A DNA stretch of 64,000 nt, from positions 62,001 through 126,000 of IMG/VR virus record IMGVR_UViG_3300030202_003189; one strand, written 5' to 3'. Position numbers and translations under genes: made by a program. The notes beneath the pieces were generated by a model, which was not told the DNA's origin, searched no databases, and saw only the letters and a program-made list of their open reading frames with translations. This document shows, in pieces, positions 19,182-37,290 of the stretch (positions within the stretch are counted from its first letter, which is position 1; every line of letters starts with the position of its first letter).

Positions 19182-19970
19182 CTACAATTCTTTTACCTCA
19201 ATACTCCTATCTTCAGTAAAGAAATATTCTTTTTTTGCCGTTTCTAACCAGAAAGGACCCGCATCATCACCAATTAGGTGAGCTGGGTGGTTTTTATAAT
19301 TAAAAAATAGAGAACCAACTCTCATATTCACGTGTTTATATCCAACTTTCGGTATTGTCATAATTCTAGCATCCATGAATACTGACCTTAATAAAAATTC
19401 ATAAACAAAGGTTAATTTAATATTATTCTTTAATCCCCCTATTTCCTTAAATAAATCCACTCTCATTACCATCCCGTCAATATTAAAGTTAGGGTAGTTT
19501 AATAACGAATCTAAGTCAAGAACCCCAATCTCCTCGGAAAAGTTCAACGCCCAAACAGGTTCGTTTGTCCATCCTATAAATTTATTTTTAGGGTCAACGT
19601 TAGTTATTAAAGGTAAAAAGATATCTACGTCTTCATAGAATCCCATGTAATCTTTAGCTTTTCTTATCCATAGGTTAGATAATTCATCATCTACCTCTAA
19701 GATACAGAAAAATTCTGTGCCACAATTATCCACCGCAAAGTTTATTTGTGATGCGAAATTATAAGACCCAGTAGTGTTAACTAAAATGTTATAATCTAAA
19801 TCTCCAAACTCTGATTTTTTTATTTCAGACTCTAATTCTGGGGTACAAACTACTACAAGTTTCTCAGCGTGAGTTTGTTGATCTTTCACACTACCTAAAG
19901 CAGTGTTCAAAAGTTCCAACTCTTTATTTTCGTTGGTGTGTATTGGTATAATAATAGTAATATCTTTCAT
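19182..19970 (-). CDS. glycosyltransferase, GT-A / GT2-like
   Basis: ITIIIPI, QINFAV, FCILEVDDEL (DxD-type), LFKEIGGL, YEFLLR. Confidence 0.75.
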   Translation of the reverse strand: MKDITIIIPIHTNENKELELLNTALGSVKDQQTHAEKLVVVCTPELESEIKKSEFGDLDYNILVNTTGSYNFASQINFAVDNCGTEFFCILEVDDELSNLWIRKAKDYMGFYEDVDIFLPLITNVDPKNKFIGWTNEPVWALNFSEEIGVLDLDSLLNYPNFNIDGMVMRVDLFKEIGGLKNNIKLTFVYEFLLRSVFMDARIMTIPKVGYKHVNMRVGSLFFNYKNHPAHLIGDDAGPFWLETAKKEYFFTEDRSIEVKEL

Positions 19971-19971
19971 T

Positions 19972-21066
19972 TTAATTCATTTGTTTTGATGCTTCAAGAG
20001 CTTGTACCTTTTCATTCTGTTCTTGATTATTTAGTGCTATAACTAGTTCTTCTATCCTTTCCTCAAATAGTTCATTATAGAAAGAGGCTACTTCTCCAGC
20101 TTCTTTCGCTTCGCTAAACTCGGATGAGGTTTTTTCCATTTCCTCATATAACTCTTGTGGGACAGAATCTTCTAACCAGTTTTTCATCACACTTGCTGCG
20201 GTGTCAACTAACGTTAATTTATTGTTAGTCCAAATTCCATTCTTTTCGGTTAACCAATTAGGGGTTAAATCAGGAACTAAACCAATAACTGGAGTTCCAG
20301 ACTTCATAGACTCAATCGGGAAAGTACCAAACCCAGCAATAGGGTCTATCCAAACTGAAAGAGCACATTCCCTTAATGCTTCAGCGAATTCTGGTCTAGT
20401 TAAACCTCTCATATCTCTAAACGTAATCCATTTTAGGAATGGGTGTTTAATGTAGAAACTTTTAATAAAATTAGCGGTCTCTCTAGACTCACGACAATGT
20501 ATAGCAATAAAAGGTTTTTTTGGTTCCTTACTTTTTACAAAATAATCAGGTATTGTTGGACTAACAATTGAGGTTTTAATATTTGGAAATAATGAGTTGA
20601 CGTAGTTCTCTTGAGATTTAGTTGTTGTAAGACATCTTCTAACAGCGAATTGTCCCCAAGTTATCCCCGGTTTCATTAATTCAAATATGTAATCGTAAGC
20701 TTGAACAAACATGATTTTCTCGCAGTTTGCATCTTTTAATTGATCTAAAACTCCACCATAAATCTCTGGGAGAATTAGAAAATCTTGTGGTCCGATTAGT
20801 GCTCCTTGATTACTTTCTCCACTAACAGCCTCATGAGGAATTTTTTCATATCCATCACCTAACCAGGTTGGTTTAACAAAATCATCCTTCTCTGTTAGTA
20901 TTATTGCGTTATATCCTAGTTCGCGTAGAATCTTAACGTGTTCATATATAGTCGATACGGCAGCCATTGCCGATCCTTTAGAATCCATACAGAAAAAATA
21001 AATTTTATTTGTTTTGGTTTCTAGGGTTTTAATTGCGCTTTTTACTTTTTGTATTATTTCACTCAT
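19972..21066 (-). CDS. glycosyltransferase, GT-B / GT4-like
   Basis: DFLILPE and GFGTFPIESMKSGTPVIG (E-x7-E-like region). Confidence 0.75.
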   Translation of the reverse strand: MSEIIQKVKSAIKTLETKTNKIYFFCMDSKGSAMAAVSTIYEHVKILRELGYNAIILTEKDDFVKPTWLGDGYEKIPHEAVSGESNQGALIGPQDFLILPEIYGGVLDQLKDANCEKIMFVQAYDYIFELMKPGITWGQFAVRRCLTTTKSQENYVNSLFPNIKTSIVSPTIPDYFVKSKEPKKPFIAIHCRESRETANFIKSFYIKHPFLKWITFRDMRGLTRPEFAEALRECALSVWIDPIAGFGTFPIESMKSGTPVIGLVPDLTPNWLTEKNGIWTNNKLTLVDTAASVMKNWLEDSVPQELYEEMEKTSSEFSEAKEAGEVASFYNELFEERIEELVIALNNQEQNEKVQALEASKQMN

Positions 21067-21071
21067 TTTAT

Positions 21072-21665
21072 TTAATTTAATTCTTTATGTTCTACCGTTT
21101 TGGTATTAATTATTTTATTAATATAACCCGATTCAAATAAATCTACAGTGTTGTCTATATTATAATCAGATTTAATATCTTTATTGTATAGTCGGTTAAT
21201 CTTTATAGATTTTTTATCTACTGGTTTGTTTTGTAGTGCCTTGGGAAAGGTGGTAACTAAAATATCACAGTGGTCCCACATCTCCTCATAAGAACTAACA
21301 AATTTTATTTCCTTTATCATACATCCTGTCTTTGAGAGAAAAAATAGTGTTGAGGGGATTGCTCTACCGCATTCCCTAGACAATAAAATAATCTCGTTCT
21401 CACCAAGGTTTTCTCTAATAAAATTATTTAGTTTGGTAACCACTTGATCCTCAATCTCATTAGAATAACCGAATATTTCCAGAGAACAATCCTCATATAA
21501 AAGTTTATCCAAATTATCTTCTCCCTTAAAATCAAAATACTTTTCTAAGTCATAATCTTTAATATCCTCAACCAAAACCTCCTTCTCAAAGTATTTCTCA
21601 AATGTCTTTGTTAATTTACCAAGTAAATTTCTTAAAACGCCATCTATGTTTAATCCTATTCTCAT
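21072..21665 (-). CDS. HAD-fold 5'(3')-deoxyribonucleotidase-like protein, degenerate motifs
   Basis: RIGLNIDGVL (first Asp is Asn), LLSR, DILVTT, RLYN. Confidence 0.6.
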   Translation of the reverse strand: MRIGLNIDGVLRNLLGKLTKTFEKYFEKEVLVEDIKDYDLEKYFDFKGEDNLDKLLYEDCSLEIFGYSNEIEDQVVTKLNNFIRENLGENEIILLSRECGRAIPSTLFFLSKTGCMIKEIKFVSSYEEMWDHCDILVTTFPKALQNKPVDKKSIKINRLYNKDIKSDYNIDNTVDLFESGYINKIINTKTVEHKELN

Positions 21666-21706
21666 TATAATGAAATTTATTTCTAATCTTGTTAAAGTAA
21701 AGTTAA

Positions 21707-22372
21707 TTACATTCCATTTAATAACTCAAAAACCGCGTCTATTGCTTCATGACGATGGTTATCAGTTAATAATGATTTATATACGAATTTTGACGTAGAT
21801 ATTTTTGGTACCTCATGTATCGCAGAGTAATTTTTATCTTTAAGATCAATCTGTTGGTTATCCCCAGTAAATATCATAGTGGAATTCTTACCCAACCTAC
21901 TTAATACCATAGATAACTGAGATTTAGTTAAGTTTTGAAATTCGTCGATAATACACACACTGTCCTCAAAAGTTCTTCCTCTAAAGTGAGCCAACGAAAC
22001 CAACTCAATCTGCTCCTCCCTTTCCATTTTATCAAGAATAGGTGGTTTATTATAAACCTTTCTCATATTCGATCTAATCGGTACCAACCAAGGTTCCATT
22101 TTTTCTCTTTCAGAACCAGGTAAAAATCCATTATCTTCTGTAGAGACCGTTGGTCTAGTGATAATGATTTTATTACATTGTTTCTTAAAGAATTGGTCAA
22201 GTGCGATTTGTACCGCTAATAATGTCTTACCACTACCCGGTTTTCCAACAATAAAATTAAAAGGGTGTTTCAGTATTTCTGTTTTGGCCTTTTTTTGTTC
22301 CGGTGAAAGAGAAAGTGAAAATCTCACAGATCCCTTTGGTGGAGTTTTATCTTTATTATTTTTTGGTGACAT
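21707..22372 (-). CDS. phoH: PhoH-family ATPase
   Basis: GKPGSGKT, ITRP, GFLPG..EKM.PW, FRGRTF, IIDEFQN, SRLG, GD..QIDL. Confidence 0.93.
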   Translation of the reverse strand: MSPKNNKDKTPPKGSVRFSLSLSPEQKKAKTEILKHPFNFIVGKPGSGKTLLAVQIALDQFFKKQCNKIIITRPTVSTEDNGFLPGSEREKMEPWLVPIRSNMRKVYNKPPILDKMEREEQIELVSLAHFRGRTFEDSVCIIDEFQNLTKSQLSMVLSRLGKNSTMIFTGDNQQIDLKDKNYSAIHEVPKISTSKFVYKSLLTDNHRHEAIDAVFELLNGM

Positions 22373-23378
22373 CTAGTATTTTTTTTATGTTATCTATTAT
22401 TATTTTAGAAGGTCTTCCATTTTTCATGTAGAAATCCTTCATTCTTGTACTCTTAGTATTAGTTGCCCAGTTTATGGGGTTGATAATATTTTTATATCTT
22501 ACTCCGTAATCCGCTGACTCTACTTCTGTCCACTCAATATTATTTCTCATAACTATACATTTTTTAGAAAAAAATGGACAAGTCTTCATTAAACCTCCTG
22601 AGTCTGTAATGATAAATTTACAGCTTGATAATGCGTCTATCATTTCACTATATTTTGCGGGTGGTTTTATGGTTATATTTTTTGGAAGGACGATGTTGTT
22701 ACCTTCAATAAAGGATTCTGTACTGTGATGTAAGTAAAAGTCTATAGGTTTATTGTATTTTTCACAGAAAGAAAGAATTTTAGAAAAACTTTCAACATTC
22801 TGATTCTCTTTTCTATGAATTGTCATAACAGGAGGACCAACAAAAGTAATATCTTTATCGTAATGTTTATTAAGTAATTCGTATTCTAAATCACCAGACA
22901 CTATTTCATTATTAAAAAAGTCCTGTATGTATCCTGTTTCTCTAGGTGTGAATTGAATCTGTGATGCCAAGTCTGCGACTATCCTGTTTAATTCCTCCGG
23001 AACTTTAATATCGTTACATCTTCGACCGGCTTCTACATGACCAAAAGGGATTTTGTGTTTATAACAAACTAAAGAGGAAGATAAAGTGCTATTTGTATCT
23101 CCGTATATTAAAACAAAATCAGGTTTTTCTTTTTTTAATATTTCACTAAACCTTTCCATAGTTTGTGATATGAAAGATACTTCATCATTATTAGATATTT
23201 GTAAATCGTGATCTATAATAAGGGAAAACTCTTCTATAAAGTAATCAGAAACATTTTCACTATAGTGTTGGTTGGTGTCAACAATGATATGGTTAATCTT
23301 ATTTTCGTTACAATAATCAAAAATAGGTTTTACTTTTACGTATTGAGGTCTAGTTCCTATTATGCTAAGAATCTTCAT
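22356..23378 (-). CDS. UDP-N-acetylhexosamine 2-epimerase, non-hydrolysing (WecB/WbpI-like)
   Basis: GTRPQYVK, QHY, YGDTNST, HVEAG, PEELNR, TIHR.EN, ITDSGG. Confidence 0.88.
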   Translation of the reverse strand: MKILSIIGTRPQYVKVKPIFDYCNENKINHIIVDTNQHYSENVSDYFIEEFSLIIDHDLQISNNDEVSFISQTMERFSEILKKEKPDFVLIYGDTNSTLSSSLVCYKHKIPFGHVEAGRRCNDIKVPEELNRIVADLASQIQFTPRETGYIQDFFNNEIVSGDLEYELLNKHYDKDITFVGPPVMTIHRKENQNVESFSKILSFCEKYNKPIDFYLHHSTESFIEGNNIVLPKNITIKPPAKYSEMIDALSSCKFIITDSGGLMKTCPFFSKKCIVMRNNIEWTEVESADYGVRYKNIINPINWATNTKSTRMKDFYMKNGRPSKIIIDNIKKILDVTKK

Positions 23379-24177
23379 TTTTTCTCATTTTGTTTCTTTC
23401 GCTTATTGTTGCTCCTAATACTTCACAAATACTACCATTTTCTAACATTGTGTTATAAAGGGCTTGGGTGTCTTTGGGGAAACACGCACCTCCATAACTT
23501 AATCTTCCGTCTGGACCCGGTACGTTTGTGTGCATCTCATTTACCCATCCATTTCTAAGTATCAGATCTTTTACCACGTCATAACTAGAATCTAGTTTAC
23601 CACATAAATCATACATTTCATTAAAGAATTGTACCTTAACCGAATAAAAGGAATTTGCAAATATCTTCATAAGTTCTGATTCTGTAGAGGTACAAATAGA
23701 GATTTTAACATCCGGAAAACCAGACTTATATAGTTCTATAATATCCTCCAACTGTTCTTCATTTTCAGTATAACCTAATACAATATGTTTTTGTTGTGCG
23801 AAATCTTTTTCACTAGTTCTGGCGGTTAGAAATTCAGGGTTGTGTACGATATTAAGATTGTAAAGGTGAGAAATATTCAAACAAGTATTAGGTTGTGTTG
23901 TGCTTTTTATTACGATAGTTCCCCTATACTCTTTTTTATTTAGTCTATTTAATATTTCATGTATTGCACTATAGTCATATCCTCTTAATTCATTCGAAAA
24001 AAGTGTTGGTAGACATAAGAACATTATATCAGACTCAAGAGTAGAGTCAAAAGAATCAAAACTTTTATATTTGTCATAACTTCTGGTTTCATATCCTTTA
24101 TTCCTAAACCAGGAGTAAACGGCGTTACCAACAAACCCTCTACCAATAACGCTAATTATTTTCTTAGTACTTTTCAT
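23365..24177 (-). CDS. UDP-glucose/UDP-GlcNAc 6-dehydrogenase family, short form (270 aa)
   Basis: IGRGFVG, CLPT, IKST, HNPEFL, SELMK..ANSF, YGGACFPKD. Start set at MKSTKK (24177). Confidence 0.85.
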   Translation of the reverse strand: MKSTKKIISVIGRGFVGNAVYSWFRNKGYETRSYDKYKSFDSFDSTLESDIMFLCLPTLFSNELRGYDYSAIHEILNRLNKKEYRGTIVIKSTTQPNTCLNISHLYNLNIVHNPEFLTARTSEKDFAQQKHIVLGYTENEEQLEDIIELYKSGFPDVKISICTSTESELMKIFANSFYSVKVQFFNEMYDLCGKLDSSYDVVKDLILRNGWVNEMHTNVPGPDGRLSYGGACFPKDTQALYNTMLENGSICEVLGATISERNKMRKNEDS

Positions 24178-24607
24178 TGTGCATCCTTTGTGCTGGTACT
24201 CCCAACCATATTTCATTATTCGGTACGTTTTTGGTGACCACTGACCCAGCACCAATTTTACAATCATTTCCCAAAATGATATTAGGTAATAGTGTGGAAT
24301 TGGCACCTATTGCTGCTCCTTCCTTTACTAGTGTTGGGGGTTCTTTTCTCCAAGCACCATTAGAAGGTGGATTTTTATCGTTCGTAAAAACAGTATGAGG
24401 TCCAACAAAAACATTATCTTCAATAATAATGTTTTCTGGAATAAATGAACCACAACCAATCCTACAGTTCTTACCTATTTTAACTTTATGACCAATCTCG
24501 ACAAAGGCTCCAATTCTAGTACCTTCCCCTATCTCTGCACTATCATAAATGTTACTACTTTCATGTATATAAGTTTCCATATTTCTAAATGTAAAAAGTT
24601 TGACCAT
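24164..24607 (-). CDS. left-handed beta-helix N-acetyltransferase (WbpD/WlbB-like)
   Basis: Hexapeptide repeats, VFTND..P, AAIGANST, IGAGSVVTK, GVPA. Confidence 0.82.
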   Translation of the reverse strand: MVKLFTFRNMETYIHESSNIYDSAEIGEGTRIGAFVEIGHKVKIGKNCRIGCGSFIPENIIIEDNVFVGPHTVFTNDKNPPSNGAWRKEPPTLVKEGAAIGANSTLLPNIILGNDCKIGAGSVVTKNVPNNEIWLGVPAQRMHNEKY

Positions 24608-25505
24608 CTAATTTAACTTCTTTCTGTCTTAGACCGTCGATTAATTTTATTGTGGGTTCCACATCTTCAAGGGTAAACCCATTCCCTTTTAATATCTCTT
24701 CGTAACTAACTTTGTGTAAGTCAGTAAATCCTGTTGAGAACTCTAACTCTTCTCCGTTTATCTTAATAGACCTAAAGGGTTTCCATTCATCCCACGGGAG
24801 GTCCTCCTTCATGATACTTAAGTTGTATCTAACCTTGGCACCTTTAAGCCATAAAGTACCCTTAGATCTCTTCCCTGTGGTTTCCACCTTAAAATCAACA
24901 ACATCCCCGAATATCCATATTAACATATCAAAAAAGTGTACGCCAATATTAGTAACCACCCCTCCAGATTTATCTGAATCGCCTTTCCAGGAATAATCAT
25001 ACCAAACACCTCTTGGTGTTATATAATCTAATGTTACCTCATGTTGTGTGATAGGAGATATGTTTTTATATTTTTCTTTAAGTTGTTTAATGAGTGGATG
25101 ATGTCTCAGTTGAAGAATGTTGTATATCTTTTTTCCTGTTTCTTTCTCTAGACCTTTTAATGACTGTAGGTGTTTATCTCTTAGAACAAGAGGTTTTTCA
25201 CAAATAACATCACAGTCATTTCTTAGCGATAGTCTTATATGTGCATCATGAAGATAGTTAGGACTACAAATTGAAACATAGTCGATGTCATCTTTGTGTC
25301 GGTAAAGATGTCGATCAAATCTTTCAGCCTCTTTGAAGTATGCGGCTTGTGGGAAATGCTTGTCTATGTATCCTACCCCATCATAGGGATCAAGAAGTGC
25401 CACCAAGTTACTATCAGTATGTTTTATCGCTTCAACATGACGAGGGGCAATATAACCCCCGGCACCTATAAGTGCAAAATTCTTTATATTATTTTTTGAA
25501 CCCAT
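24585..25505 (-). CDS. wbpB: Gfo/Idh/MocA oxidoreductase, UDP-GlcNAcA 3-dehydrogenase (WbpB/WlbA-like)
   Basis: FALIGAGGYIAPRH, CSPNYLHDAH, ICEKPL, ILQLRHH, SWKGD..KSGG..TNIGVHFFD, EFS.GFTDLH. Confidence 0.85.
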   Translation of the reverse strand: MGSKNNIKNFALIGAGGYIAPRHVEAIKHTDSNLVALLDPYDGVGYIDKHFPQAAYFKEAERFDRHLYRHKDDIDYVSICSPNYLHDAHIRLSLRNDCDVICEKPLVLRDKHLQSLKGLEKETGKKIYNILQLRHHPLIKQLKEKYKNISPITQHEVTLDYITPRGVWYDYSWKGDSDKSGGVVTNIGVHFFDMLIWIFGDVVDFKVETTGKRSKGTLWLKGAKVRYNLSIMKEDLPWDEWKPFRSIKINGEELEFSTGFTDLHKVSYEEILKGNGFTLEDVEPTIKLIDGLRQKEVKLDGQTFYI

Positions 25506-26607
25506 TTATACAAGTTATTATCGTTTTTAATTCATTTTCAGTAAGGTGTGGAGATACAGGTATATGTAAAACCTCCTTACATCTTTTTTCGCATTCAGGT
25601 AGCGATTGGTCCCCAAAAATCTTTTGGTATATCGGTTGTTTGTGTAATGGAATTGGCCAATAAACAAAGGTTTCAACACCGACATCTGACAGACTTTTTT
25701 GTAGCTCATCTCTACCTTCTACTATCAGAGTATACAGGTACCAACTATGATTGTCAATAGTATCAGTAGGGTACGGTAATGTAACTCTAGGATTTTTAAT
25801 ATTATCAAAGTAATATTGTGCGTTTTTTTGTCTTCTTTTTAACCACTCATCCGAGGCACCATTTAATAATACAGTGAGGAATCTAGCTTGTAATGCATCC
25901 AACCTTAAATTACCCCCTATAGTCTCATGGTAGTATCTTTTCTTAGAACCATGGGCTCTAATCATTTTTATTTTATTATAGGTTTCTTCGCTATTAGTTA
26001 TCACAATACCACCATCCCCCAAACAACCTAATGTTTTAGCAGGAAAAAAACTAAAAGATGATGCTAGTGAATGTGTTCCTGAGTGACCTCCTTCAGGATA
26101 ATAAGAACCGAAAGATTCTGCGGCATCTTCAAATAAGAAAGCTCCTCTGGATTTACAAAAATTATTAAGTTCCTTAATTGATTTGGTTTCGCCGAAAAGA
26201 TGAACAAACATTACCGCTTTAGTGTTTTCAGTCCAAGCCTCCTTAAATTCTTTTACTGATGGATGAAAGGAACCGGGCTCATTATCTACAAATATAGGAT
26301 TTAATCCTGCAACTAATATTGCTTCAGAACTTGCAATAAAAGTATATGAGGGTACCAATACGTCAGAACCTTTAGGTAAGTCCAAGGACATTAAGATGGC
26401 TAACAATCCATCTGTACCACTCGAAACCCCTACCGCATATTTGGCTCCTGTATATTCGGCAAACTCCTGCTCAAATCTACTAACTGAGGGACCATTCACG
26501 TAAATCCCGTCAGATAATGACTTATCTAACTCCCCCATTAAATAATCTTTATAGGGTGCCAGCAACTTAGGATAGTCAAAAAATCTAATAGTTTCTTTTG
26601 TTTGCAT
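25489..26607 (-). CDS. DegT/DnrJ/EryC1/StrS aminotransferase (WbpE-like)
   Basis: VSSGTDGL, VPSYTFIAS, VHLFG, EDAAESFG, FSFFPAKTLGCLGDGG, NLRLDALQA. Confidence 0.88.
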   Translation of the reverse strand: MQTKETIRFFDYPKLLAPYKDYLMGELDKSLSDGIYVNGPSVSRFEQEFAEYTGAKYAVGVSSGTDGLLAILMSLDLPKGSDVLVPSYTFIASSEAILVAGLNPIFVDNEPGSFHPSVKEFKEAWTENTKAVMFVHLFGETKSIKELNNFCKSRGAFLFEDAAESFGSYYPEGGHSGTHSLASSFSFFPAKTLGCLGDGGIVITNSEETYNKIKMIRAHGSKKRYYHETIGGNLRLDALQARFLTVLLNGASDEWLKRRQKNAQYYFDNIKNPRVTLPYPTDTIDNHSWYLYTLIVEGRDELQKSLSDVGVETFVYWPIPLHKQPIYQKIFGDQSLPECEKRCKEVLHIPVSPHLTENELKTIITCINGFKK

Positions 26608-28466: not shown

Positions 28467-28467
28467 A

Positions 28468-30535: not shown

Positions 30536-31878
30536 ATTAATATTTCTTTTTCAAATTTAATCGCAACCGCCTTGTGAGTTGAGGTCTTATTGTACCATTC
30601 TAAACCGTTTTTGGCAATCTGTTTCATTTCTTCTACTGGTAATTCTAAGAAAGAAAGTAATATATTACCAAAATCATTTGGGTCTTTTCCTAGATGAATA
30701 ACAGGACAGTTAGGTGCGTCTATATTTTTATTTGCGGCTTCCATTGCTTCTGGAGTGAAGTTATTGATTGTGGCAAAGGTTATATTACCAGTCATTAATG
30801 CTTCAACCGTACTTCCCCCGAAATAACCAACAAATGGATTAAACTCATCTATGTATATGTGAGACATTTCTTTTAGTTTCATTATTTCACTATTATCTAT
30901 CCATCCAGTTTCTTTATCACATAAGTGTTTGGTTTTCTCATATGTTTGTGGTGTAATAAACTTAAACTTCTTTTTGGTACTATCTTTTGAATTCTTTTCT
31001 AAATACTCTATAACTTGTGTTGTAATACTTGTTATTAAATCGGTTCCCTTCATCTCTTTAGAGGTTGGGGCGTGGAAGATGATAATCTCATTAGTATCAA
31101 ACTTCTCATCGATTAACTTCTCTACCTTTTTTCTGTCTAAGTCTTTATCGTAAGAGGTATATAAAGTAACATGGTTTTCCTTCTTACTCTTCTCTTCAAT
31201 TCCAATAGAGTTCATAAACAAACCCATAAATTCAGGGAATATACCTGGTTTATCAAGACTGTTGGTTGGGGTGGTGTCATACCAAGAAAGTCTATAAAGA
31301 TCCACACCATGTATTAATTTATTAAAGTGATTAATCCCTATAAGGTTAAACAGTTGAAAATTGTTTCTATAGTGTGTCCCTGTATGGTATAAATGAATAT
31401 TTTTATTTTTTCCGGCTTTCGTATCCTCTAAAAGATTAATACCTGTCATTTCATTTATCCTACCAATCCCAGTTAGTCTGTTTACTGGATTCTCGGTTCC
31501 AGCTTTATTAAAAGTTTGTAAATATTTTTGTACACTCCTTTGTCCCTTACTGTTGAGTAGTTTTTCTGGTGCGAAGTCTTCTTGGAATGGAGATCTTTCA
31601 GGGGCAAATATGATATGATCCGAATCTAACAACCAATCTTTCGCAGATTTAACATCCTCTTCTCTAATAATAAGATTACCTTCGGCATCCATATCGTTTA
31701 AGTTATAGTCATGTTGTTTTGTGAATTTGATTGGGTGAGGAATTTCACAAATTACTTTAGATTCAAACTCATCGCAATGACTATTAATTGCGGCAGAATA
31801 CTCAGTCATAACATTTGCGTAATCTTTCCACCCTATAAAACTTACCTTTTTCTTTTTTATTTCTTTATCCCTTTGCAT
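30532..31878 (-). CDS. divergent GT-B-like glycosyltransferase
   Basis: IFHAPTS..MKGT, IYIDEF...[13 protein letters not shown]; inside the sugar cassette. Confidence 0.6.
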
Positions 31879-32453
31879 AAGTATATATTTTGTTTACCAT
31901 GTTGTCCTTCCGCAATAGCGGTTATCTCAACATCTAATTTTTTATTATATCGTTTAATTACCTCATCTTTATCCTTAAAGTGTCTTACATGACTCTCAGT
32001 ATCAAAACTGGGAACACTGAAAAAGATAACATCTCCCTTATTTAACCTATCCAAGATTTCCATATCAAAAGGAATGTGCTCGAAAAATTCAAAGGAACAG
32101 TATATTACATTATCGTGAGAAGGAAAATCCTTTTCCAAATCCATTAAAAAGAATTTCTTTCTTTTCCTATCCTTCCAATTAGAAACCTTACCTTTATTAA
32201 TCGCCTCAATCGAAAAATCGTATCCGAAGTACTTAATATTATCATCCTTTAACATGAGTGGAAAATGTCCTGGACCACAACCCAAATCAACAATAGTGTC
32301 TAGTTCTGGTCTTTCATATTTTATGTAATTCATAATATCTTCTACAGCACAAGTCCAAACAATATAATACATTTCCATTTCACTAGGCGAAACGTCATAA
32401 TCTCCTTTACTGTAAGCATTATCGTAATATTCGGCTTTTTGATATTCTCCCAT
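31857..32453 (-). CDS. class I SAM-dependent methyltransferase
   Basis: IVDLGCGPG, GYDFS, EFFEHI, FSVP, HVRHF. Confidence 0.85.
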   Translation of the reverse strand: MGEYQKAEYYDNAYSKGDYDVSPSEMEMYYIVWTCAVEDIMNYIKYERPELDTIVDLGCGPGHFPLMLKDDNIKYFGYDFSIEAINKGKVSNWKDRKRKKFFLMDLEKDFPSHDNVIYCSFEFFEHIPFDMEILDRLNKGDVIFFSVPSFDTESHVRHFKDKDEVIKRYNKKLDVEITAIAEGQHGKQNIYLCKGIKK

Positions 32454-32457
32454 TTAT

Positions 32458-33210
32458 TTAATCTTTATAAACAGCTTTTGAGACCTCCTGTAGTTTTTGT
32501 ACATACTTCCAATATTTAGTTTCTCTAACGTCGGTTAAATCTTTTTTTGGCCATATCCAGTTATTTCTCTCTCCTTCTAGATAATGTGAACCATGTCCTG
32601 GTGGTTCACCATTTGCCCAAGCCTTTCTTCTTCTTTTTAGAGTTCCTTCTCTTTCTTCTTTAGTTTTAGTATTTCCATAATTAATCATCATACCTTCTAT
32701 TACCCCTAGTCTCTGACCAGGAAAAGAAACATCATCTGCCAAATAACGTAAAACAGGATTATATTTGTGTATCATGTTAAACTTATTTAATGTTCCATAA
32801 TGAAAATAGGTGTTAAATGGATCTTTTTTTCCTCTTTCCTCTCCAGTGTTAAAAAAGTTAACACATTCTATTTGTGCTAAGTTAAAACCTCTTCTATCTA
32901 GTCTTGATAATGCATCATGAAGGGGTTCTATTGTTACTGGAAACAAATCACATCCATTATAAATTGCCCAATCAGGTTTTTCTCGGTGAAGGGTTTTTAC
33001 AATATCATTTTGTAACATCCTTAAATCAAAAGAGTCACCAGTATCTAATCTATGTGACGGAACTTTATTTTCTTGGAGATATTCCCAAGAACCATCAGTA
33101 GACATATTATCTATGATATATGGTTCTAGTTTATTTTGTTTACAGTATTCTAATTTTAATGGAAGATATTCTCTTTCGTTCCACACTGTTAATATACACA
33201 TTACTCTCAT
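32458..33210 (-). CDS. GT2-like glycosyltransferase
   Basis: VWNE, IIDNMSTDGS, PDWAIYNGCD (variant DxD). Confidence 0.7.
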   Translation of the reverse strand: MRVMCILTVWNEREYLPLKLEYCKQNKLEPYIIDNMSTDGSWEYLQENKVPSHRLDTGDSFDLRMLQNDIVKTLHREKPDWAIYNGCDLFPVTIEPLHDALSRLDRRGFNLAQIECVNFFNTGEERGKKDPFNTYFHYGTLNKFNMIHKYNPVLRYLADDVSFPGQRLGVIEGMMINYGNTKTKEEREGTLKRRRKAWANGEPPGHGSHYLEGERNNWIWPKKDLTDVRETKYWKYVQKLQEVSKAVYKD

Positions 33211-34781
33211 CCTACTACATTTATAAATTGTCCTATTATTCTTCCTTTACGTTCTTGTCCTAAAGCCCCTCCAATAAAAGGGAATAGTCTTTCTCTGTAA
33301 TCTTCTTGTAAACGATGAAGTTTATCTTCATCTTTATCTCTGGTTTTACTCTCATAGTGGTATGCCACGGCATCACTCACAAATAAATTAATCTTTCCTT
33401 CTAATAAAATTGAGAAATTTAATTCAGCATCCTCAAAACATTCCGTGTAGGTTGGGTTAAACCCACCAACCTTTAAGAATAGTTCTTTTTGTACTAATAA
33501 AAAAGCCCCAGTATTACCAACGACTGGTGCGACACCTTCAAAACTATGTCGATAAGCTTGTCGTAAATTATAGTGGGTTATTTCGATACGACTTAAACCT
33601 TGTTCGCTCAACCATTCTTTCTTTAACCATAATAACATACCACCATGTTGTACGGTATTGTCTTCAAAATGTAATCTAGCCCCAACAGTACCAACCTTCT
33701 TTCTATTTTTTATCCAAGTTGATACCATTCTACTAATAGCATCATTAATTAACTCAATGTCATTATTACAAAATAATAGTAATTCTGAATCTTCTGAAAT
33801 ATGGTCATAAACAACTTCATTATTAATTTGTGCAAAGTTATAGTAATCAAATTTTACTAGTTTTATTTTTTCATAATTTCCACAGAATTCTTCTATCTGT
33901 TTCATGTTCTTATCTTCACTCCCAGTATCTGCAACTATAATCTCATAGTTAACGTACTTTGTTTTGTTAACGATTGAATTGAGGCAATTAAAAAGGATAT
34001 CTATATTATCCTTTGTTGGGATTATGATTGATAGTTTTGGTTGTTTTTTAATGTAGGTTTCTTTCTCAGGATAGAAAATTTCAACGGGTACCTCGCTAGG
34101 TAAGTTTGAAGAGTAGGTTTCCACAAATTTAATTCTGTTTTTTTCCCATTCTTCGTTGGTTTCACCAATGGACTTATGTGTAATTCTAATATTGGTAATC
34201 ACACCTATCTTTACTTCTTCTAAATGATTTCTAAAAGAGAAGTCCACATCATAAAAATGAAAACCTCTTACTTCTTTGTTAAAATTCTTTTTTAATTTCG
34301 TACGATCAACACCAAAGAATAATCCGTCAACCATTACTACTGGTATAATATCATTTATAAAAGCTTTAGAGTATTGTGACTCCCAGGTCTTTCCTTCGTT
34401 AGAGTGATTTACAATACCCACCATATTAGACAATGGTTTGTTTATGTCGTCCCACCATCTTCCAGTTTCAGGTAACCTTCTTGTTCCGGCTAAACCTAAT
34501 ATACCATATTCCGATTCCTTAAAATGTGAAATGATTCGTTTTCCCCATTTTTTAGTGTTAAAAATAATATCGTCATGACAAAATATAATGATGTCATTTT
34601 TTGCCTCTTTAAGTGCCTTGTTATAGATTTCCGTTAAGGAGGTCCCATTAGGATTCTCATAATGTAGAACTTCAAGGTCTTTAACGCCACAAGTATCTGT
34701 TATGTGTTTTACATAAGTTTCTTCTAGTTTTCTTGTACTAAATACTACTGTTAATTTCATTTTATTTTCCTGTTGACCCAA
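33207..34781 (-). CDS. two-domain GT2 glycosyltransferase
   Basis: Domain 1: YN.A, FCHDDI, VDG, GFHFYD. Domain 2: SIIIPT, VADTGS, FCNNDI, TGAFL, VGGF, EDAE. Confidence 0.85.
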   Translation of the reverse strand: MGQQENKMKLTVVFSTRKLEETYVKHITDTCGVKDLEVLHYENPNGTSLTEIYNKALKEAKNDIIIFCHDDIIFNTKKWGKRIISHFKESEYGILGLAGTRRLPETGRWWDDINKPLSNMVGIVNHSNEGKTWESQYSKAFINDIIPVVMVDGLFFGVDRTKLKKNFNKEVRGFHFYDVDFSFRNHLEEVKIGVITNIRITHKSIGETNEEWEKNRIKFVETYSSNLPSEVPVEIFYPEKETYIKKQPKLSIIIPTKDNIDILFNCLNSIVNKTKYVNYEIIVADTGSEDKNMKQIEEFCGNYEKIKLVKFDYYNFAQINNEVVYDHISEDSELLLFCNNDIELINDAISRMVSTWIKNRKKVGTVGARLHFEDNTVQHGGMLLWLKKEWLSEQGLSRIEITHYNLRQAYRHSFEGVAPVVGNTGAFLLVQKELFLKVGGFNPTYTECFEDAELNFSILLEGKINLFVSDAVAYHYESKTRDKDEDKLHRLQEDYRERLFPFIGGALGQERKGRIIGQFINVVG

Positions 34782-35382
34782 AACCGTCTGCGCCTCTGTC
34801 AGTTTGGGTTGTTATCTTATTATTTATTAGTTCCACGTACTCCCCAGTAACTACTGGACATAAACAAGCTTGGGCAATACGATCACCTTTTCCTATTATT
34901 CTTTCCTCACTACTAAAATTAGCTAGAATAATTTTTATTTCACCTATATATCCTTGATCTATAGTACCAGGAGAGTTTAACACAAACAAACCTTCCTTAA
35001 GAGATAATCCAGACCTACTTCTAACCTGAACCTCAAATCCTTTGGGTATTTCTAAACTAATTCCTGTTGGTACCAAACCAACTTCTTTTGGTTGTATAGT
35101 TATCCCCTCTGATGCTCTTAGGTCAAAACCACTATCTAGTTTATAAACAAAAGATGGGTCTTCATTGTCTGATTTATTCTGGAATTTTAGTTCTATTTTT
35201 AGATTCTCGTTAAATCCTGCAATATTATTTTTCATTTGTTGCTCCTTATAGTCCAGATCAACTTGATCAATCTCTTTTGTTAAGTCTATCATTTCATCTA
35301 GAGTTGCATCTGATGACATGGCCTCGTACTTGTCCACTAATTTTCCAAAAACTTTTTCTAAATCATTAATATTGTCATTCAT
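34762..35382 (-). CDS. dut: trimeric dUTPase
   Basis: SGFDL, RSRSG, NSPGTIDQGYIGEI, GDRIAQ, RGADGFGSTG. Confidence 0.95.
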   Translation of the reverse strand: MNDNINDLEKVFGKLVDKYEAMSSDATLDEMIDLTKEIDQVDLDYKEQQMKNNIAGFNENLKIELKFQNKSDNEDPSFVYKLDSGFDLRASEGITIQPKEVGLVPTGISLEIPKGFEVQVRSRSGLSLKEGLFVLNSPGTIDQGYIGEIKIILANFSSEERIIGKGDRIAQACLCPVVTGEYVELINNKITTQTDRGADGFGSTGK

Positions 35383-35383
35383 T

Positions 35384-36082
35384 TTATAAATTTTTAACTT
35401 TTTTAATTATTTTAATTAACACACTCACATCTTTTTCGCAGTAATGCATAATTTCGTTTTTCTTATTGCTGTACCAAGATTGGTGTATATTCTCTCCAGT
35501 AATCTCACCTTCCTTAGGTGAAGGTATTCCCATAACAGAAGTTACAAGATGTAATGAGGATAGTCCCTTGTAGGATCCAAAATTCCACATCTCCTTTGTA
35601 TCTAGAGCTTTAACTTCCCAAGGTTTTGTATCATGAGATGGTAATAAAGAAGGTGGCTTAATCCCGTTAATTAACATCCTTTTACCTAGATAAGGTAAGT
35701 CGAAATTTTTAATATTATGACCACATAGTGTAAAACCAACCTTTTCTATTTTATTTAGTAATTCTGTTAGTTGTATTAAATCATCCTTTTCGTTACCACT
35801 ACAGAAGGATTGTAACTTTTCTTTTTTTCCATTTATAAAACCCACACTAATACACACAATCTTACCAAACTCAGGTAACAATCCAGAATATTTTTTATAT
35901 AAGAATTCACAACTTTTATCCTCATTTTCAGGATAGTGTCTTCTAAAATAAGAACATCCTATAGAATCCCATAATTCCCAAAGGGATATATCTCTTTCTT
36001 TAAGTTCGTGGGAATCTTTATAGGAACCAGCGGTCTCTATATCTATAAACAATAATTTATTTTCATCTATGTTTTCTAACAT
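35384..36082 (-). CDS. stand-alone DEDDy 3'-5' exonuclease (PolB exo-like)
   Basis: FIDIET, GHNIKNFDLP, LDT, YCEKDV. Confidence 0.85.
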   Translation of the reverse strand: MLENIDENKLLFIDIETAGSYKDSHELKERDISLWELWDSIGCSYFRRHYPENEDKSCEFLYKKYSGLLPEFGKIVCISVGFINGKKEKLQSFCSGNEKDDLIQLTELLNKIEKVGFTLCGHNIKNFDLPYLGKRMLINGIKPPSLLPSHDTKPWEVKALDTKEMWNFGSYKGLSSLHLVTSVMGIPSPKEGEITGENIHQSWYSNKKNEIMHYCEKDVSVLIKIIKKVKNL

Positions 36083-36093
36083 TCTTGTGTGAT

Positions 36094-37290
36094 TTATTTA
36101 TTAACAATACTTCTATACCATTCGGCTCTGTTTTTTGTAACTTCTTTAATATGGTACTTTTGAACATCCTCATAAAGTTGTTCCCCTAACTCTTTAATCA
36201 TATTTGGATTATTGATTAGGGTTTTAATGTGTTTGTACCACCATTTATGATTTTTTGTAGTTGGGACAAGTAGGGAATTCTTCCCATGTACTAAGTCAAT
36301 AGTATAAGGACCAAAATCCTGTGCGATAAGTGCTTTCTTATGGAAACCAGCCTCCACAACTTTTAATTGTGATTTTACTTTATTAAATGTTGTTTCTTTT
36401 AGTGGTGCTAAAGAAACATCCATTAAATTATAATTTGTTGCATAAGTTGTAATTGGCTTCGTCCATACTCGTCTATAGTTATCGTATATGTTTTTAGGAG
36501 TACCTTTTTTGAACTTTAGTAATTTTTCTACATCTTCTTTGTTATTCATTATGTCATAATCTGATGTCATTATTTGTTCATACTGGTACCATACCGATTC
36601 TTGTGGTGTGATCTTTCTGGTTCTTTTTCTTCCTTGTTGATCTATTTCAGTCATAGACCCTCTAGTATCGAAACCACATAAAACCATTTGGTATTTATCT
36701 TTTAGGGAGGGATCGGCTTTTAGTTTCTGAATATTACCACGTAATATTTCTAAATCGTGTTTGTGGGATGAACCACCAAGCCAACCAACTCTCACCTTAT
36801 CGGATTCTTCTGGGTTTGGAGTAAATTGTCTTTTTGATGGGTCGATAGCATTAGGGAATATCTCTACATTCCTATTATGTTGTAACATTTCCTCGGCAAA
36901 TACTTTGGTAGTTGTTGTTACATACTCAGCGGCTTGGATATTGGCTATTATTCGTTGATTAATTTTTTCTTCTACAATCATGGCGTGTGCTGGGTGTTCA
37001 GGACCAGGCATCCAATAATCATCTAAATCCATAATAGTGATAATCCCCCATTTTTTACAATCTTTAAGTAACCTTAGACAATTACCCCAATCACCCATAC
37101 CTCTATGAAAATGAACAATATCAAAATCTTGCCAATAGGTATCTCTATTAGTCCATGGGTTATAATTTATTTCTACTCTAAATTCGTTAGGGTAATATTT
37201 TTCTAATGCGATGTGAGGATCAATCGACCTGAATGAACCAACCCCTGTTCTATCTGAAGGGACAACTAATATTTTTATCTTTTCTGACAT
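36094..37290 (-). CDS. glycosyltransferase, GT-B fold
   Basis: GVGSFR..P, MDLDDYW, PNAID, VGWLGGSSH..DL, DVSLAPL...FN..KSQLKVVEAG. Confidence 0.8.
   Translation of the reverse strand: MSEKIKILVVPSDRTGVGSFRSIDPHIALEKYYPNEFRVEINYNPWTNRDTYWQDFDIVHFHRGMGDWGNCLRLLKDCKKWGIITIMDLDDYWMPGPEHPAHAMIVEEKINQRIIANIQAAEYVTTTTKVFAEEMLQHNRNVEIFPNAIDPSKRQFTPNPEESDKVRVGWLGGSSHKHDLEILRGNIQKLKADPSLKDKYQMVLCGFDTRGSMTEIDQQGRKRTRKITPQESVWYQYEQIMTSDYDIMNNKEDVEKLLKFKKGTPKNIYDNYRRVWTKPITTYATNYNLMDVSLAPLKETTFNKVKSQLKVVEAGFHKKALIAQDFGPYTIDLVHGKNSLLVPTTKNHKWWYKHIKTLINNPNMIKELGEQLYEDVQKYHIKEVTKNRAEWYRSIVNK

What the first reader, a model, noticed from the sequence alone, without database searches (positions are those of the whole stretch)
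19182..37290. Six soluble glycosyltransferase genes and no membrane glycan machinery; core-plus-cassette layout
GT genes at 19182, 19972, 30532, 32458, 33207 (two domains) and 36094 have no evident TM segments, and the window has no Wzx, Wzy, ABC exporter or polyprenol-phosphate initiating transferase. Four GTs are interleaved with typical phage genes (sigma, PhoH, dUTPase, exonuclease), while the sugar synthesis genes form one overlapping run between PhoH and the two-domain GT2. Inference: a conserved core glycan on a cytoplasmic acceptor, capped by a swappable serotype-like cassette.
Basis: partly seen in the sequence, partly recalled or inferred. Interest (0 to 1): 0.65.

Follow-up and report, generated by a model that had tools for sequence, protein, structure and literature searches.

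The report
Phage glycan genes: core plus swappable cassette
An uncultured marine jumbo phage carries six membrane-free glycosyltransferase genes and a complete soluble pathway for a rare acidic diamino sugar, inserted at a gene-swapping hot spot; the layout is real, but what the sugar chain is attached to remains unproven.

Summary
All six genes are glycosyltransferases (seven GT domains). Four have family or sequence evidence, and the two without usable Pfam support fold as GT-B (30532) and GT-A (32458). None has a TM segment. The 231-kb contig (about 70% complete) and five relatives, three of them 96-100% complete, lack the lipid-linked initiating and export families searched.

The run 22356-26607 is the WbpA/B/D/E/I route to UDP-ManNAc3NAcA. 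WbuX/HisH/HisF (acetamidino formation), an SDR, an acyltransferase and a methyltransferase follow.

Synteny across about 50 related loci supports "core plus cassette". GT-B 19972, GT-A 19182 and GT4 36094 recur across the lineage. The dUTPase-to-PhoH interval holds at least five different contents, including none, and shows fine variation: formyltransferase instead of acyltransferase, and methyltransferase present or absent.

The inference of a cytoplasmic acceptor is not shown. GTs that work on undecaprenyl-linked sugars are normally soluble, and the host could supply the membrane steps.

My best guess, at about 0.4, is autonomous glycosylation of the phage's own virion proteins. Host envelope remodelling is a strong rival at about 0.3. 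DNA glycosylation is unlikely. Glycan islands in marine T4-like phages are already described, so this is a new variant of a known kind.

The parts
36094..37290 (-). Core GT-B glycosyltransferase of a phage-specific 'RfaG-like' family
   Evidence: phrog_7162 4e-43. Weak Glyco_trans_1_4 hit. The listed nearest Atlas clusters are 96-100% viral. Present in 16 IMG/VR loci at 43-85% identity.
35384..36082 (-). 3'-5' exonuclease (DNA_pol_B_exo2); conserved phage gene flanking the system
   Evidence: PF10108 3.8e-14. Syntenic in relatives.
34762..35382 (-). dUTPase; upstream border of the variable interval
   Evidence: NF001862 141 bits, above the cut-off of 103. Syntenic.
33207..34781 (-). Two-domain GT-A glycosyltransferase (Glyco_tranf_2_5 + Glycos_transf_2). 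It sits at the cassette border. It is present in each relative examined whose cassette start lies in the fetched DNA, and absent in the one examined relative without a cassette.
   Evidence: Similar to K4CP chondroitin polymerase, 8.4e-11, two stretches. Present in L001/L002/L004-L010/L014/L059/L060/L145, absent in L146.
32458..33210 (-). GT-A fold glycosyltransferase (cassette)
   Evidence: AF2 pLDDT 95.4. Foldseek hits SunS/ThuS, SpsA, TarS/TarP at E 3e-9 to 1e-6. 93-97% identical in close relatives.
31857..32453 (-). SAM-dependent methyltransferase (tailoring). Present in L060, absent in L001/L002.
   Evidence: Methyltransf_23 4.6e-8..
30532..31878 (-). GT-B fold glycosyltransferase (cassette); the fastest-diverging gene of the cassette
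   Evidence: AF2 pLDDT 87. VIA-align Z 19-20 to GT4-family enzymes. 52-53% identity in L001/L002, where neighbouring genes are 90-97%.
29564..30535 (-). SDR nucleotide-sugar epimerase/dehydratase
   Evidence: PF01370 1.4e-53. Below every NCBIfam equivalog cut-off.
29064..29591 (-). Hexapeptide acyltransferase (WbbJ/WcaF-like). Replaced by a formyltransferase in L002/L022.
   Evidence: Formyl_trans_N 1.1e-25 plus Formyl_trans_C at the same position in L002.
28468..29067 (-). HisH-type glutaminase (WbuY-like) of the acetamidino module
   Evidence: TIGR01855 234.5 bits, above the cut-off of 105.
27705..28466 (-). HisF2/WbuZ/AglZ acetamidino-modification protein
   Evidence: NF038364 313.6 bits, above the cut-off of 310.
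26585..27718 (-). WbuX-family N-acetyl sugar amidotransferase (PP-loop)
   Evidence: TIGR03573 251.9 bits, above the cut-off of 203.
25489..26607 (-). DegT-family sugar aminotransferase (WbpE role)
   Evidence: PF01041 4.8e-93.
24585..25505 (-). WbpB, UDP-GlcNAcA 3-dehydrogenase
   Evidence: PDB 3oa2 WbpB 4.6e-84 over the full length.
24164..24607 (-). Hexapeptide N-acetyltransferase (WbpD role)
   Evidence: Hexapep 1.5e-25. NeuD/PglB/VioB subfamily 2.7e-25.
23365..24177 (-). Short (270 aa) nucleotide-sugar 6-dehydrogenase (WbpA role). It has the Rossmann domain and the catalytic Cys region but no C-terminal UDP-binding domain.
   Evidence: Called as 265 aa in L060.
22356..23378 (-). UDP-GlcNAc-type non-hydrolysing 2-epimerase (WbpI role)
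   Evidence: PF02350 1.6e-54. wecB model 170.9 bits, below the cut-off.
21707..22372 (-). PhoH; downstream border of the variable interval
   Evidence: PF02562 5e-49. Syntenic.
21072..21665 (-). NT5C-like 5'-deoxynucleotidase; conserved neighbour
   Evidence: PF06941 5.9e-5. Syntenic.
19972..21066 (-). Core GT-B glycosyltransferase, phage-specific
   Evidence: PDB 8xsg AmGGT 6.9e-6. 38 IMG/VR loci. No match in GenBank phages. One marginal hit in 301 Bacteroidia genomes.
19182..19970 (-). Core GT-A (GT2) glycosyltransferase
   Evidence: PF00535 23.4 bits. Its orthologue in L146 has an unmarked PF00535 hit. Always adjacent to 19972.
18461..19180 (-). Sigma-70-family (gp55-like late) sigma factor; conserved neighbour
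   Evidence: TIGR02937 4.9e-5. phrog_234 5.7e-4. 42-97% identity in relatives.

Best explanation
The region is a wholly soluble, phage-borne glycan assembly system in an uncultured marine T4-like jumbo phage, whose host is probably in the Bacteroidota.

Three glycosyltransferases recur across the lineage and are largely phage-specific: GT4 at 36094, GT-B at 19972 and GT-A at 19182. They sit among replication and nucleotide genes.

Between dUTPase and PhoH lies an exchange hot spot. In this phage it opens with a two-domain GT2 and holds the following:
- the five-enzyme Wbp route from host UDP-GlcNAc to UDP-ManNAc3NAcA;
- the WbuX/HisH/HisF module that converts an acetamido group to an acetamidino group;
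- an SDR, an acyltransferase and a methyltransferase;
- two more GTs.

Inferred mechanism: the phage makes its own activated rare sugar and builds a heteroglycan in the cytoplasm. The acceptor needs no phage-encoded lipid initiation, flipping or export, and is most likely the phage's own virion proteins. The core GTs would lay down a lineage-wide base, and the cassette enzymes would add a variable, strain-specific outer part.

Shown here: gene identities, absence of membrane steps, synteny, and cassette exchange. Inferred: the order of sugar addition and the acceptor.
For: GT and pathway identities.

No TM segments and no polytopic proteins. No initiating or export families on the contig or in relatives, three of them 96-100% complete.

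Core synteny across 38 + 16 loci.

At least five different contents at the hot spot:
- the Wbp cassette (window, L060);
- NeuB, pyruvyl transferase and an MptE-like protein (L059);
- GT25, GT10, PglD_N and DegT (L145);
- PIG-L, GT32, two DegT, NUDIX and two epimerases (L144);
- only an IMPDH-like gene (L146).

Fine variation: acyltransferase versus formyltransferase, and methyltransferase present or absent.

Mosaic identities: the cassette is 84-95% identical where the core GTs are 67-70% (L021), and the reverse holds in L018.

The core GTs look phage-specific. GT-B 19972 gave 1 marginal hit in 301 Bacteroidia genomes. The nearest Atlas clusters of GT4 are 96-100% viral. By contrast WbpB has 50-57% identical orthologues in many Bacteroidota. 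This fits an old phage-specific acceptor plus borrowed sugar pathways.

The nearest solved relative of 19972 belongs to the Agt group of cytoplasmic elongating GTs (PMC12159676).

The MptE-like domain family includes the Maf flagellin (protein) glycosyltransferases (my own knowledge). It occurs in the NeuB cassette of L059 at 34.7 bits against a cut-off of 34.6.

Precedents, from established knowledge: virus-encoded cytoplasmic virion glycosylation in chloroviruses and Megavirinae (review PMC9614988) and in mycobacteriophages (Freeman et al. 2023, cited in PMC12619734).
Against: There is no direct evidence for any acceptor.
- No virion proteomics exists and there is no cultured relative; GenBank phages lack the 19972 and two-domain GT2 genes.
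- No Ser/Thr-rich acceptor-like tracts turned up in real ORFs.
- The GT genes lie in a replication/nucleotide-type block, not in the structural module.
- Soluble GTs are equally typical of lipid-linked O-antigen and capsule assembly.
- The sugar made here is best known from LPS.
- The K4CP-like two-domain GT2 resembles enzymes that act on lipid-linked polymers.
- The contig is only about 70% complete.
Confidence: 0.4

Rival explanations
1. Host envelope remodelling. The phage GTs extend a host undecaprenyl-diphosphate-linked primer at the inner face of the membrane. The host's own flippase/polymerase/ligase or ABC exporter then displays the new glycan as LPS O-chain or capsule. This would change the surface of the infected cell, for example to exclude competing phages.
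For: - The cassette matches the soluble part of an LPS pathway (WbpB 4.6e-84; acetamidino module).
- GTs of lipid-linked pathways normally lack TM segments (established knowledge).
- The two-domain GT2 resembles K4CP capsule polymerase.
- WbpB orthologues are common in Bacteroidota, so candidate hosts may already handle this type of sugar.
- This is the usual reading of GT/LPS islands in pelagimyophages and cyanomyophages (PMC7029224).
- The prophage enzyme TarP is a soluble phage GT that modifies a lipid-linked host polymer (my own knowledge; it appeared as a fold match).
Against: - The three core GTs are kept across phages only about 40-50% identical to this one in their shared proteins. They are also kept where no cassette exists (L146). 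That is easier to explain by a phage-borne acceptor than by a host-specific one.
- The core GT-B 19972 has essentially no homologues in 301 sampled Bacteroidia genomes, so it is not a captured host LPS gene.
- Known phage O-antigen conversion systems use membrane proteins (GtrABC, Wzy-beta, Oac). None is present here.
- No lytic phage has been shown to do this.
Confidence: 0.3
2. DNA hypermodification. The GTs glycosylate hydroxylated bases in phage DNA to evade restriction, as in T-even phages and arabinosyl-5hoC phages.
For: - The GT genes sit among dUTPase, a deoxynucleotidase, an exonuclease and DNA polymerase.
- T4 alpha-glucosyltransferase is among the tied fold matches of 30532 (Z 19.1) and among the Atlas leads.
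- Phages can encode nucleotide-sugar synthesis for DNA glycans (PMC13326640).
Against: - No thymidylate-synthase homologue is on the contig.
- Four of five relatives, including all three that are 96-100% complete, have exactly one such homologue. The two tested score above NCBIfam thymidylate-synthase equivalog cut-offs (396 vs 327 and 334 vs 325 bits). So they look like ordinary ThyA, with no extra hydroxymethylase or hydroxylase.
- No Tet_JBP domain was found, though the control for that search was silent.
- Cultured coliphages with distant homologues of GT4 (Phapecoctavirus, four adjacent GTs) belong to a group reported as exceptionally sensitive to restriction systems (PMC8594841).
- As far as I know, an acidic acetamidino uronic acid has not been described as a DNA adduct.
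Confidence: 0.07
3. Another soluble acceptor. The system glycosylates a host protein or a small molecule, or makes a free oligo- or polysaccharide. Possible purposes are host takeover or an infected-cell matrix.
For: - The nearest solved relative of 19972, AmGGT, elongates free oligosaccharides (PMC12159676).
- The best fold matches of 32458 are peptide S-glycosyltransferases.
- BshA/MshA/SenB-type small-molecule GTs are among the top matches of 30532.
Against: These fold matches are tied with many others and carry no specificity. Seven GT domains plus a multi-step rare-sugar pathway with strain-level variation is typical of surface-exposed glycans under diversifying selection. It is not typical of an intracellular metabolite.
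Confidence: 0.1

Closest known systems
Pseudomonas aeruginosa O5 (wbp) B-band O-antigen cluster; Bordetella wlb locus
   Same: Same chemistry: WbpA, WbpB, WbpE, WbpD and WbpI roles for UDP-ManNAc3NAcA, plus a WbpG/WbuX-type amidotransferase with HisH/HisF, an SDR and soluble GTs. The comparison with the wbp gene list is from my own knowledge.
   Different: None of the membrane components is present (Wzx, Wzy, Wzz, initiating transferase WbpL). The dehydrogenase is a 270-aa form without the C-terminal UDP-binding domain. It is carried by a lytic-type jumbo phage at a hot spot between dUTPase and PhoH.
Virus-encoded virion glycosylation in giant viruses (chlorovirus capsid glycans; clade-specific fibril glycan clusters of Megavirinae; review PMC9614988)
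   Same: Soluble virus-encoded GTs plus bacterial-type rare-sugar pathways. There are no lipid-linked export genes, and gene clusters differ between related viruses.
   Different: Those are eukaryote-infecting Nucleocytoviricota, and glycans have been shown on their virions. Here the virus is a tailed phage and nothing is known about its virions.
Mycobacteriophage virion glycosylation (Che8, Corndog; Freeman et al. 2023, cited in PMC12619734)
   Same: Phage-encoded cytoplasmic GTs that decorate capsid and tail-tube subunits.
   Different: Those are small siphoviruses of Actinobacteria with two to a few GTs and no nucleotide-sugar pathway. No sequence relationship was shown here.
GT/LPS gene islands of marine T4-like pelagimyophages and cyanomyophages (PMC7029224)
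   Same: Marine T4-like myoviruses with clusters of GTs and sugar-nucleotide genes in variable regions; the acceptor is unknown.
   Different: There the genes lie in the tail-fibre 'host recognition cluster'. Here there is a fixed hot spot in the replication/nucleotide block plus three lineage-wide core GTs. A complete Wbp-plus-acetamidino pathway is not mentioned in the passages of that paper that I read.
Moraphages, an aquatic jumbo phage lineage (PMC12619734)
   Same: Jumbo size, T4-like structural genes, predicted Bacteroidota hosts, and four GT orthogroups in the core genome together with sigma factor, PhoH, dUTPase and exonuclease.
   Different: Membership is not confirmed. No class II Lys-tRNA ligase domain was found in this contig or in four relatives. 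Relatives reach 362-380 kb, against a maximum of 307 kb for moraphages. That paper does not describe the cassette hot spot.
Temperate-phage O-antigen conversion (GtrABC, Oac, Wzy-beta) and prophage TarP
   Same: Phage genes that alter a host surface glycan. TarP is soluble and cytoplasmic.
   Different: Gtr, Oac and Wzy systems are membrane proteins, absent here. Those phages carry one to three genes, not seven GT domains plus a sugar pathway.
T4 alpha/beta-glucosyltransferases and arabinosyl-5hoC systems (PMC13326640)
   Same: Soluble phage GT-B enzymes encoded near nucleotide-metabolism genes.
   Different: The required base-hydroxylating enzyme was not found. The only ThyA homologues in relatives score as ordinary thymidylate synthase.

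Membership tests
UDP-ManNAc3NAcA (Wbp) pathway | WbpB-type UDP-GlcNAcA 3-dehydrogenase | tested here: met
   PDB 3oa2 'WbpB' 4.6e-84, residues 6-294.
UDP-ManNAc3NAcA (Wbp) pathway | The four partner enzymes (6-dehydrogenase, aminotransferase, N-acetyltransferase, 2-epimerase), adjacent | tested here: inconclusive
   All four families are present, contiguous and overlapping. Each scores below the NCBIfam equivalog cut-offs, so substrate specificity is inferred from context. The dehydrogenase lacks the C-terminal domain.
Acetamidino module (WbuX/WbuY/WbuZ; AglXYZ) | PP-loop amidotransferase plus HisH-like and HisF-like subunits, adjacent | tested here: met
   TIGR03573 251.9 bits (cut-off 203), TIGR01855 234.5 (cut-off 105), NF038364 313.6 (cut-off 310).
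Wzx/Wzy-dependent O-antigen or capsule locus | Initiating phosphoglycosyl transferase (Bac_transf or WecA type), Wzx flippase, Wzy polymerase | tested here: not met
   No match on the contig. No ORF has more than 4 hydrophobic segments. The initiating transferases and Wzx are also absent from five relatives, three of them 96-100% complete. The contig is about 70% complete.
ABC-transporter-dependent polysaccharide locus | ABC-2 permease (Wzm/KpsM) | tested here: not met
   PF01061 is absent from five relatives. On the own contig only the hydropathy scan was run.
Gtr-type O-antigen conversion | Membrane GtrA flippase, membrane-anchored GtrB, polytopic GtrC | tested here: not met
   No polytopic ORFs. 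The GtrB-like PHROG hit covers only the soluble GT2 domain of 33207-34781. The Gtr families themselves were not searched.
DNA base glycosylation system | An enzyme that makes a hydroxylated base (ThyA paralogue, or DNA methyltransferase plus TET/5mYOX) | tested here: not met
   The Tet_JBP search had no positive control, and DNA C5-methyltransferase was not searched.
Virus-encoded virion glycosylation | Glycan covalently attached to virion proteins | not testable with these tools
   Needs virions. No cultured relative was found in GenBank phages.
Moraphage lineage (PMC12619734) | Shared core genes: four GT orthogroups, sigma factor, PhoH, dUTPase, exonuclease and T4-like structural genes | tested here: met
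   compared.
Moraphage lineage (PMC12619734) | Lysine-tRNA ligase VOG (24 of 28 genomes); phylogenetic placement within the clade | tested here: inconclusive
   PF00152 was not found in G000-G004. No tree could be built because moraphage sequences are not held here.

The most novel reading that the evidence does not exclude
A widespread lineage of marine jumbo phages, with Gram-negative (probably Bacteroidota) hosts, coats its own virions with a self-made glycan. A conserved phage-specific base is built by three core GTs. The outer part is switched between strains by exchanging sugar cassettes (ManNAc3NAmA, nonulosonic acid, fucose/bacillosamine-like) at one hot spot. This would be a phage counterpart of giant-virus glycan coats and of bacterial serotypes.
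Probability: 0.35. Interest if true: 0.8.

Novelty: new variant of a known kind. Interest (0 to 1): 0.55.

Why it matters
Clusters of glycosyltransferase and "LPS" genes are common in large marine phages, and their purpose has never been shown.

This locus gives a clean case to test:
- a fixed insertion site;
- three lineage-wide, largely phage-specific GTs;
- interchangeable cassettes whose products can be predicted;
- demonstrable absence of phage-encoded membrane steps in the relatives searched, three of them 96-100% complete.

If the acceptor is the virion, tailed phages of Gram-negative bacteria would join giant viruses and mycobacteriophages in making their own glycan coats. That would bear on adsorption, particle stickiness and grazing in the sea.

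If the acceptor is the host envelope, it would be the first lytic-phage system that rewrites an O-antigen using only soluble enzymes.

The short WbpA-like dehydrogenase and the compact soluble Wbp-plus-acetamidino set may also be useful for enzymatic synthesis of rare sugars.

Tried and rejected
Searches that found nothing:
- Megablast of the region against GenBank phages: no match.
- tblastn of GT-B 19972 against GenBank phages: no match.
- tblastn of the two-domain GT2: only partial single-domain hits in unrelated phages.
- The look-up of encoding contigs with the window's own GT2, and with tblastn-derived (inexact) ORF ends: nothing on record. It worked once exact ORFs were given.

Leads that went nowhere:
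- Ser/Thr-rich acceptor tracts: the top scores were mostly spurious antisense ORFs.
- Promoter and terminator scans were at chance level and say nothing about operon structure.
- PDB sequence searches gave nothing for 30532, 32458 and GT4.
- The chromosomal neighbourhood of bacterial GT4 homologues (ECF sigma factor, T9SS cargo protein) gave no functional clue.
- The only multi-TM ORF of any size on the contig (422 aa, 4 hydrophobic segments) has no Pfam family.

Considered and rejected:
- Filing the phage as a moraphage.
- Treating the T4 AGT fold match as evidence for DNA glycosylation; it is tied with many GT4 enzymes.

Tools not used:
- Complex prediction, because no binding claim is made.
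- The look-up of sequencing runs and read laying, because expression would not identify the acceptor.
- The search of protein representatives, because it was not needed.

No alternative genetic code was used.

The 301-genome tallies include one unpublished genome (G188).

Full report
**Setting**

The window is bases 62001-126000 of a single 231,285-bp linear IMG/VR viral contig, which CheckV rates about 70% complete. GC content is 31-41%. The + strand carries T4-type head genes:
- portal, phrog_213;
- prohead protease, Peptidase_S77;
- major capsid protein, phrog_138.

By capsid protein the nearest named phages are Microcystis phage Mel-JY01, Flavobacterium phage immuto and Rhodothermus phage RM378, at 35-44% identity. 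Nothing in GenBank phages matches at the DNA level. Homologues come from Tara and other marine metagenomes. The finding lies in one minus-strand block, 12350-37290.

**Check of the observation**

All six genes are glycosyltransferases.

| Gene | Fold / family | Evidence |
|---|---|---|
| 33207-34781 | Two GT-A domains | PF13712 2.8e-28 and PF00535 2e-20; resembles the bifunctional chondroitin polymerase K4CP, 8.4e-11 |
| 36094-37290 | GT-B, phage family | phrog_7162 4e-43; nearest Atlas clusters 96-100% viral "RfaG-like" GTs |
| 19182-19970 | GT-A (GT2) | Just reaches the GT2 cut-off; orthologues in relatives carry GT2 families |
| 19972-21066 | GT-B | No Pfam hit; matches the retaining GT-B enzyme AmGGT, PDB 8xsg, E 6.9e-6 |
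| 30532-31878 | GT-B | pLDDT 87; Z 19-20 to BshA, HepE, SenB, TarM and T4 AGT, all tied |
| 32458-33210 | GT-A | pLDDT 95; matches SunS/ThuS, SpsA, TarS/TarP |

AmGGT is a relative of the Agt enzymes, which elongate glucose chains on proteins in the cytoplasm of Actinobacillus. The last two genes had no usable family hit, so I gathered homologues and folded them.

A hydropathy scan finds no TM segment in any GT or sugar enzyme. No ORF on the whole contig has more than four hydrophobic segments.

Family searches of the contig find no Bac_transf, WecA/MraY-type transferase, Wzx or Wzy_C. Because the contig is incomplete, I repeated the key searches on five related contigs, three of them 96-100% complete. 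None has Bac_transf, Glycos_transf_4, Polysacc_synt or an ABC-2 permease. The absence of membrane steps therefore holds for every genome searched.

**What the cassette makes**

The run 22356-26607 has five parts:
- a WecB-type 2-epimerase;
- a short nucleotide-sugar 6-dehydrogenase;
- a hexapeptide N-acetyltransferase;
- WbpB (PDB 3oa2, 4.6e-84);
- a DegT aminotransferase.

This is the five-enzyme route from UDP-GlcNAc to UDP-2,3-diacetamido-2,3-dideoxy-mannuronic acid, known from P. aeruginosa O5 and Bordetella (pathway from established knowledge).

Next come a WbuX amidotransferase, a HisF2/AglZ protein and HisH. All three score above their curated cut-offs. This module converts an acetamido group to an acetamidino group. 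An SDR, a WbbJ/WcaF-like acyltransferase, a GT-B, a methyltransferase and a GT-A complete the run.

In effect the phage holds the soluble components of a wbp-type locus and none of the membrane ones.

**Synteny**

- The core GT-B 19972 retrieved 38 IMG/VR loci. Wherever the DNA extends far enough, the order PhoH, NT5C, GT-B, GT-A, sigma and downstream genes is kept, at 41-93% identity.
- GT4 retrieved 16 loci, about twelve of them with GT4, exonuclease and dUTPase in order.
- The interval between dUTPase and PhoH differs between loci:

| Locus | Content of the dUTPase-PhoH interval |
|---|---|
| Window, L060 | The Wbp cassette, about 12.4 kb |
| L059 | Two-domain GT2, a GT2, an MptE-like protein, NeuB, a pyruvyl transferase and a methyltransferase |
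| L145 | Two-domain GT2, GT25, GT10, PglD_N and DegT |
| L144 | PIG-L, GT32, two DegT, NUDIX and two epimerases |
| L146 | A single IMPDH-like gene: no cassette and no two-domain GT2, yet all three core GTs |

Close relatives also show fine variation:
- The methyltransferase is absent in L001 and L002.
- The acyltransferase is replaced by a formyltransferase in L002 and L022.
- GT-B 30532 is only 52-53% identical in L001 and L002, where flanking genes are 90-97% identical.
- Identities are mosaic. L021 shares 84-95% in the cassette but 67-70% in the core GTs. L018 shares 91-98% in the core but 82% in the epimerase. This pattern is what recombination would produce.

The "core plus swappable cassette" layout is therefore real.

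**The acceptor**

*Against DNA.*
- The contig has no ThyA homologue.
- Four of five relatives, including all three that are 96-100% complete, have exactly one. The two tested pass thymidylate-synthase equivalog cut-offs.
- No Tet_JBP domain was found, although the control for that search was silent.
- Coliphages of the genus Phapecoctavirus carry four adjacent GTs, including distant GT4 homologues. Their group is reported as exceptionally restriction-sensitive (PMC8594841).

*For a phage-borne acceptor.*
- The core GTs persist across very divergent phages, even without a cassette.
- They are largely phage-specific. GT-B 19972 gave 1 marginal hit in 301 Bacteroidia genomes. GT4 gave five real homologues at about 34% identity.
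- By contrast WbpB has 50-57% identical orthologues in many Bacteroidota.

*For the host envelope.*
- The sugar is a classic LPS sugar.
- Lipid-linked pathway GTs are soluble.
- The K4CP-like enzyme type acts on lipid-anchored polymers.
- This is the reading usually given for similar islands in pelagimyophages (PMC7029224).

I put virion-protein glycosylation at about 0.4, host envelope remodelling at about 0.3, another soluble acceptor at about 0.1 and DNA at about 0.07.

**Relation to what is known**

GT/LPS islands in marine T4-like phages are described. A recently named aquatic jumbo lineage, the moraphages, has four GT orthogroups in its core genome next to sigma, PhoH, dUTPase and exonuclease.

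This phage resembles that lineage, but I could not confirm membership. No class II Lys-tRNA ligase domain was found, and relatives are larger than any moraphage.

What is new here:
- the defined hot spot;
- the separation into three lineage-wide core GTs and exchangeable cassettes;
- the complete soluble Wbp-plus-acetamidino pathway in a phage;
- the demonstrated absence of membrane steps in the genomes searched.

I rate it a new variant of a known kind, of moderate interest. It would be high if virion glycosylation were shown.

**Limits**

- TM prediction was by hydropathy only.
- The genome is incomplete.
- Substrate specificities of the sugar enzymes, other than WbpB and the acetamidino module, rest on family membership and context.
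- The order of sugar addition ("core" then "cap") is inferred from gene layout only.
- The 301-genome tallies include one unpublished genome (G188), on which no claim rests.

Noticed in passing
window 23365-24177 (-): The WbpA-like nucleotide-sugar dehydrogenase is only 270 aa. It keeps the GxGxxG Rossmann motif and the catalytic Cys region, but it ends where the C-terminal UDP-binding domain normally begins. The short form is conserved (265 aa, 75-79% identity) in relatives, so it is probably functional.
   Followed up: partly
window 12350-13261 (-): A PLP-dependent enzyme (PALP, 2.2e-65; cysteine synthase/threonine dehydratase type) closes the minus-strand block next to the capsid gene. It is conserved at 77-92% identity in relatives and may be an auxiliary metabolic gene.
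   Followed up: no
window 10360-12297 (+): The major capsid protein is 645 aa. The T4-type capsid profile matches only residues 377-622, and tblastn matches come in two pieces covering 50-59%. This suggests a large extra N-terminal or inserted region.
   Followed up: no
window 30532-31878 (-) and 37404-41174 (+): GT-B 30532 is 52-73% identical among close relatives, and the 1256-aa protein transcribed divergently from GT4 is 50-61% identical. Their neighbouring genes are 80-97% identical. Both look like local hot spots of divergence.
   Followed up: partly
L062 3996-4736 (-) and 6634-7539 (-) (relative G002, 380 kb): Next to ThyA, a complete relative encodes a succinate dehydrogenase/fumarate reductase iron-sulfur subunit (432 bits, above the cut-off) and a UvsE UV-damage endonuclease. 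The former is unusual for a phage.
   Followed up: no
L146 7095-8189 (+): In the one examined relative that lacks a sugar cassette, the dUTPase-PhoH hot spot holds a single IMPDH/GMP-reductase-like gene. So the site accepts non-glycan cargo too.
   Followed up: no
L150 8985-15221; also L149 and L151 (Bacteroidia chromosomes): The few bacterial homologues of core GT4 (about 34% identity, full length) lie in a conserved chromosomal neighbourhood. It holds a 171-aa unknown gene, an ECF sigma factor and a T9SS-sorted 824-aa protein. It is not an O-antigen locus.
   Followed up: partly
L152 4645-7789 (Escherichia phage tuntematon, NC_052660.1): A cultured coliphage (Phapecoctavirus) has four consecutive annotated glycosyltransferases, two of them distant homologues of GT4, next to primase/helicase, Dam methylase and DNA polymerase. 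I found no described function for them in four papers. It could serve as a tractable model.
   Followed up: partly
G000:C1:196844-198112 (+), outside the window (L147): The only sizeable membrane-type ORF on the contig is 422 aa with about 4 hydrophobic segments. It matches no Pfam family.
   Followed up: partly
L042, L030, L036, L046, L047 and other distant relatives, just upstream of the 19972 orthologue: More distant relatives have an extra 100-123-aa gene between NT5C and the core GT-B. This window lacks it.
   Followed up: no
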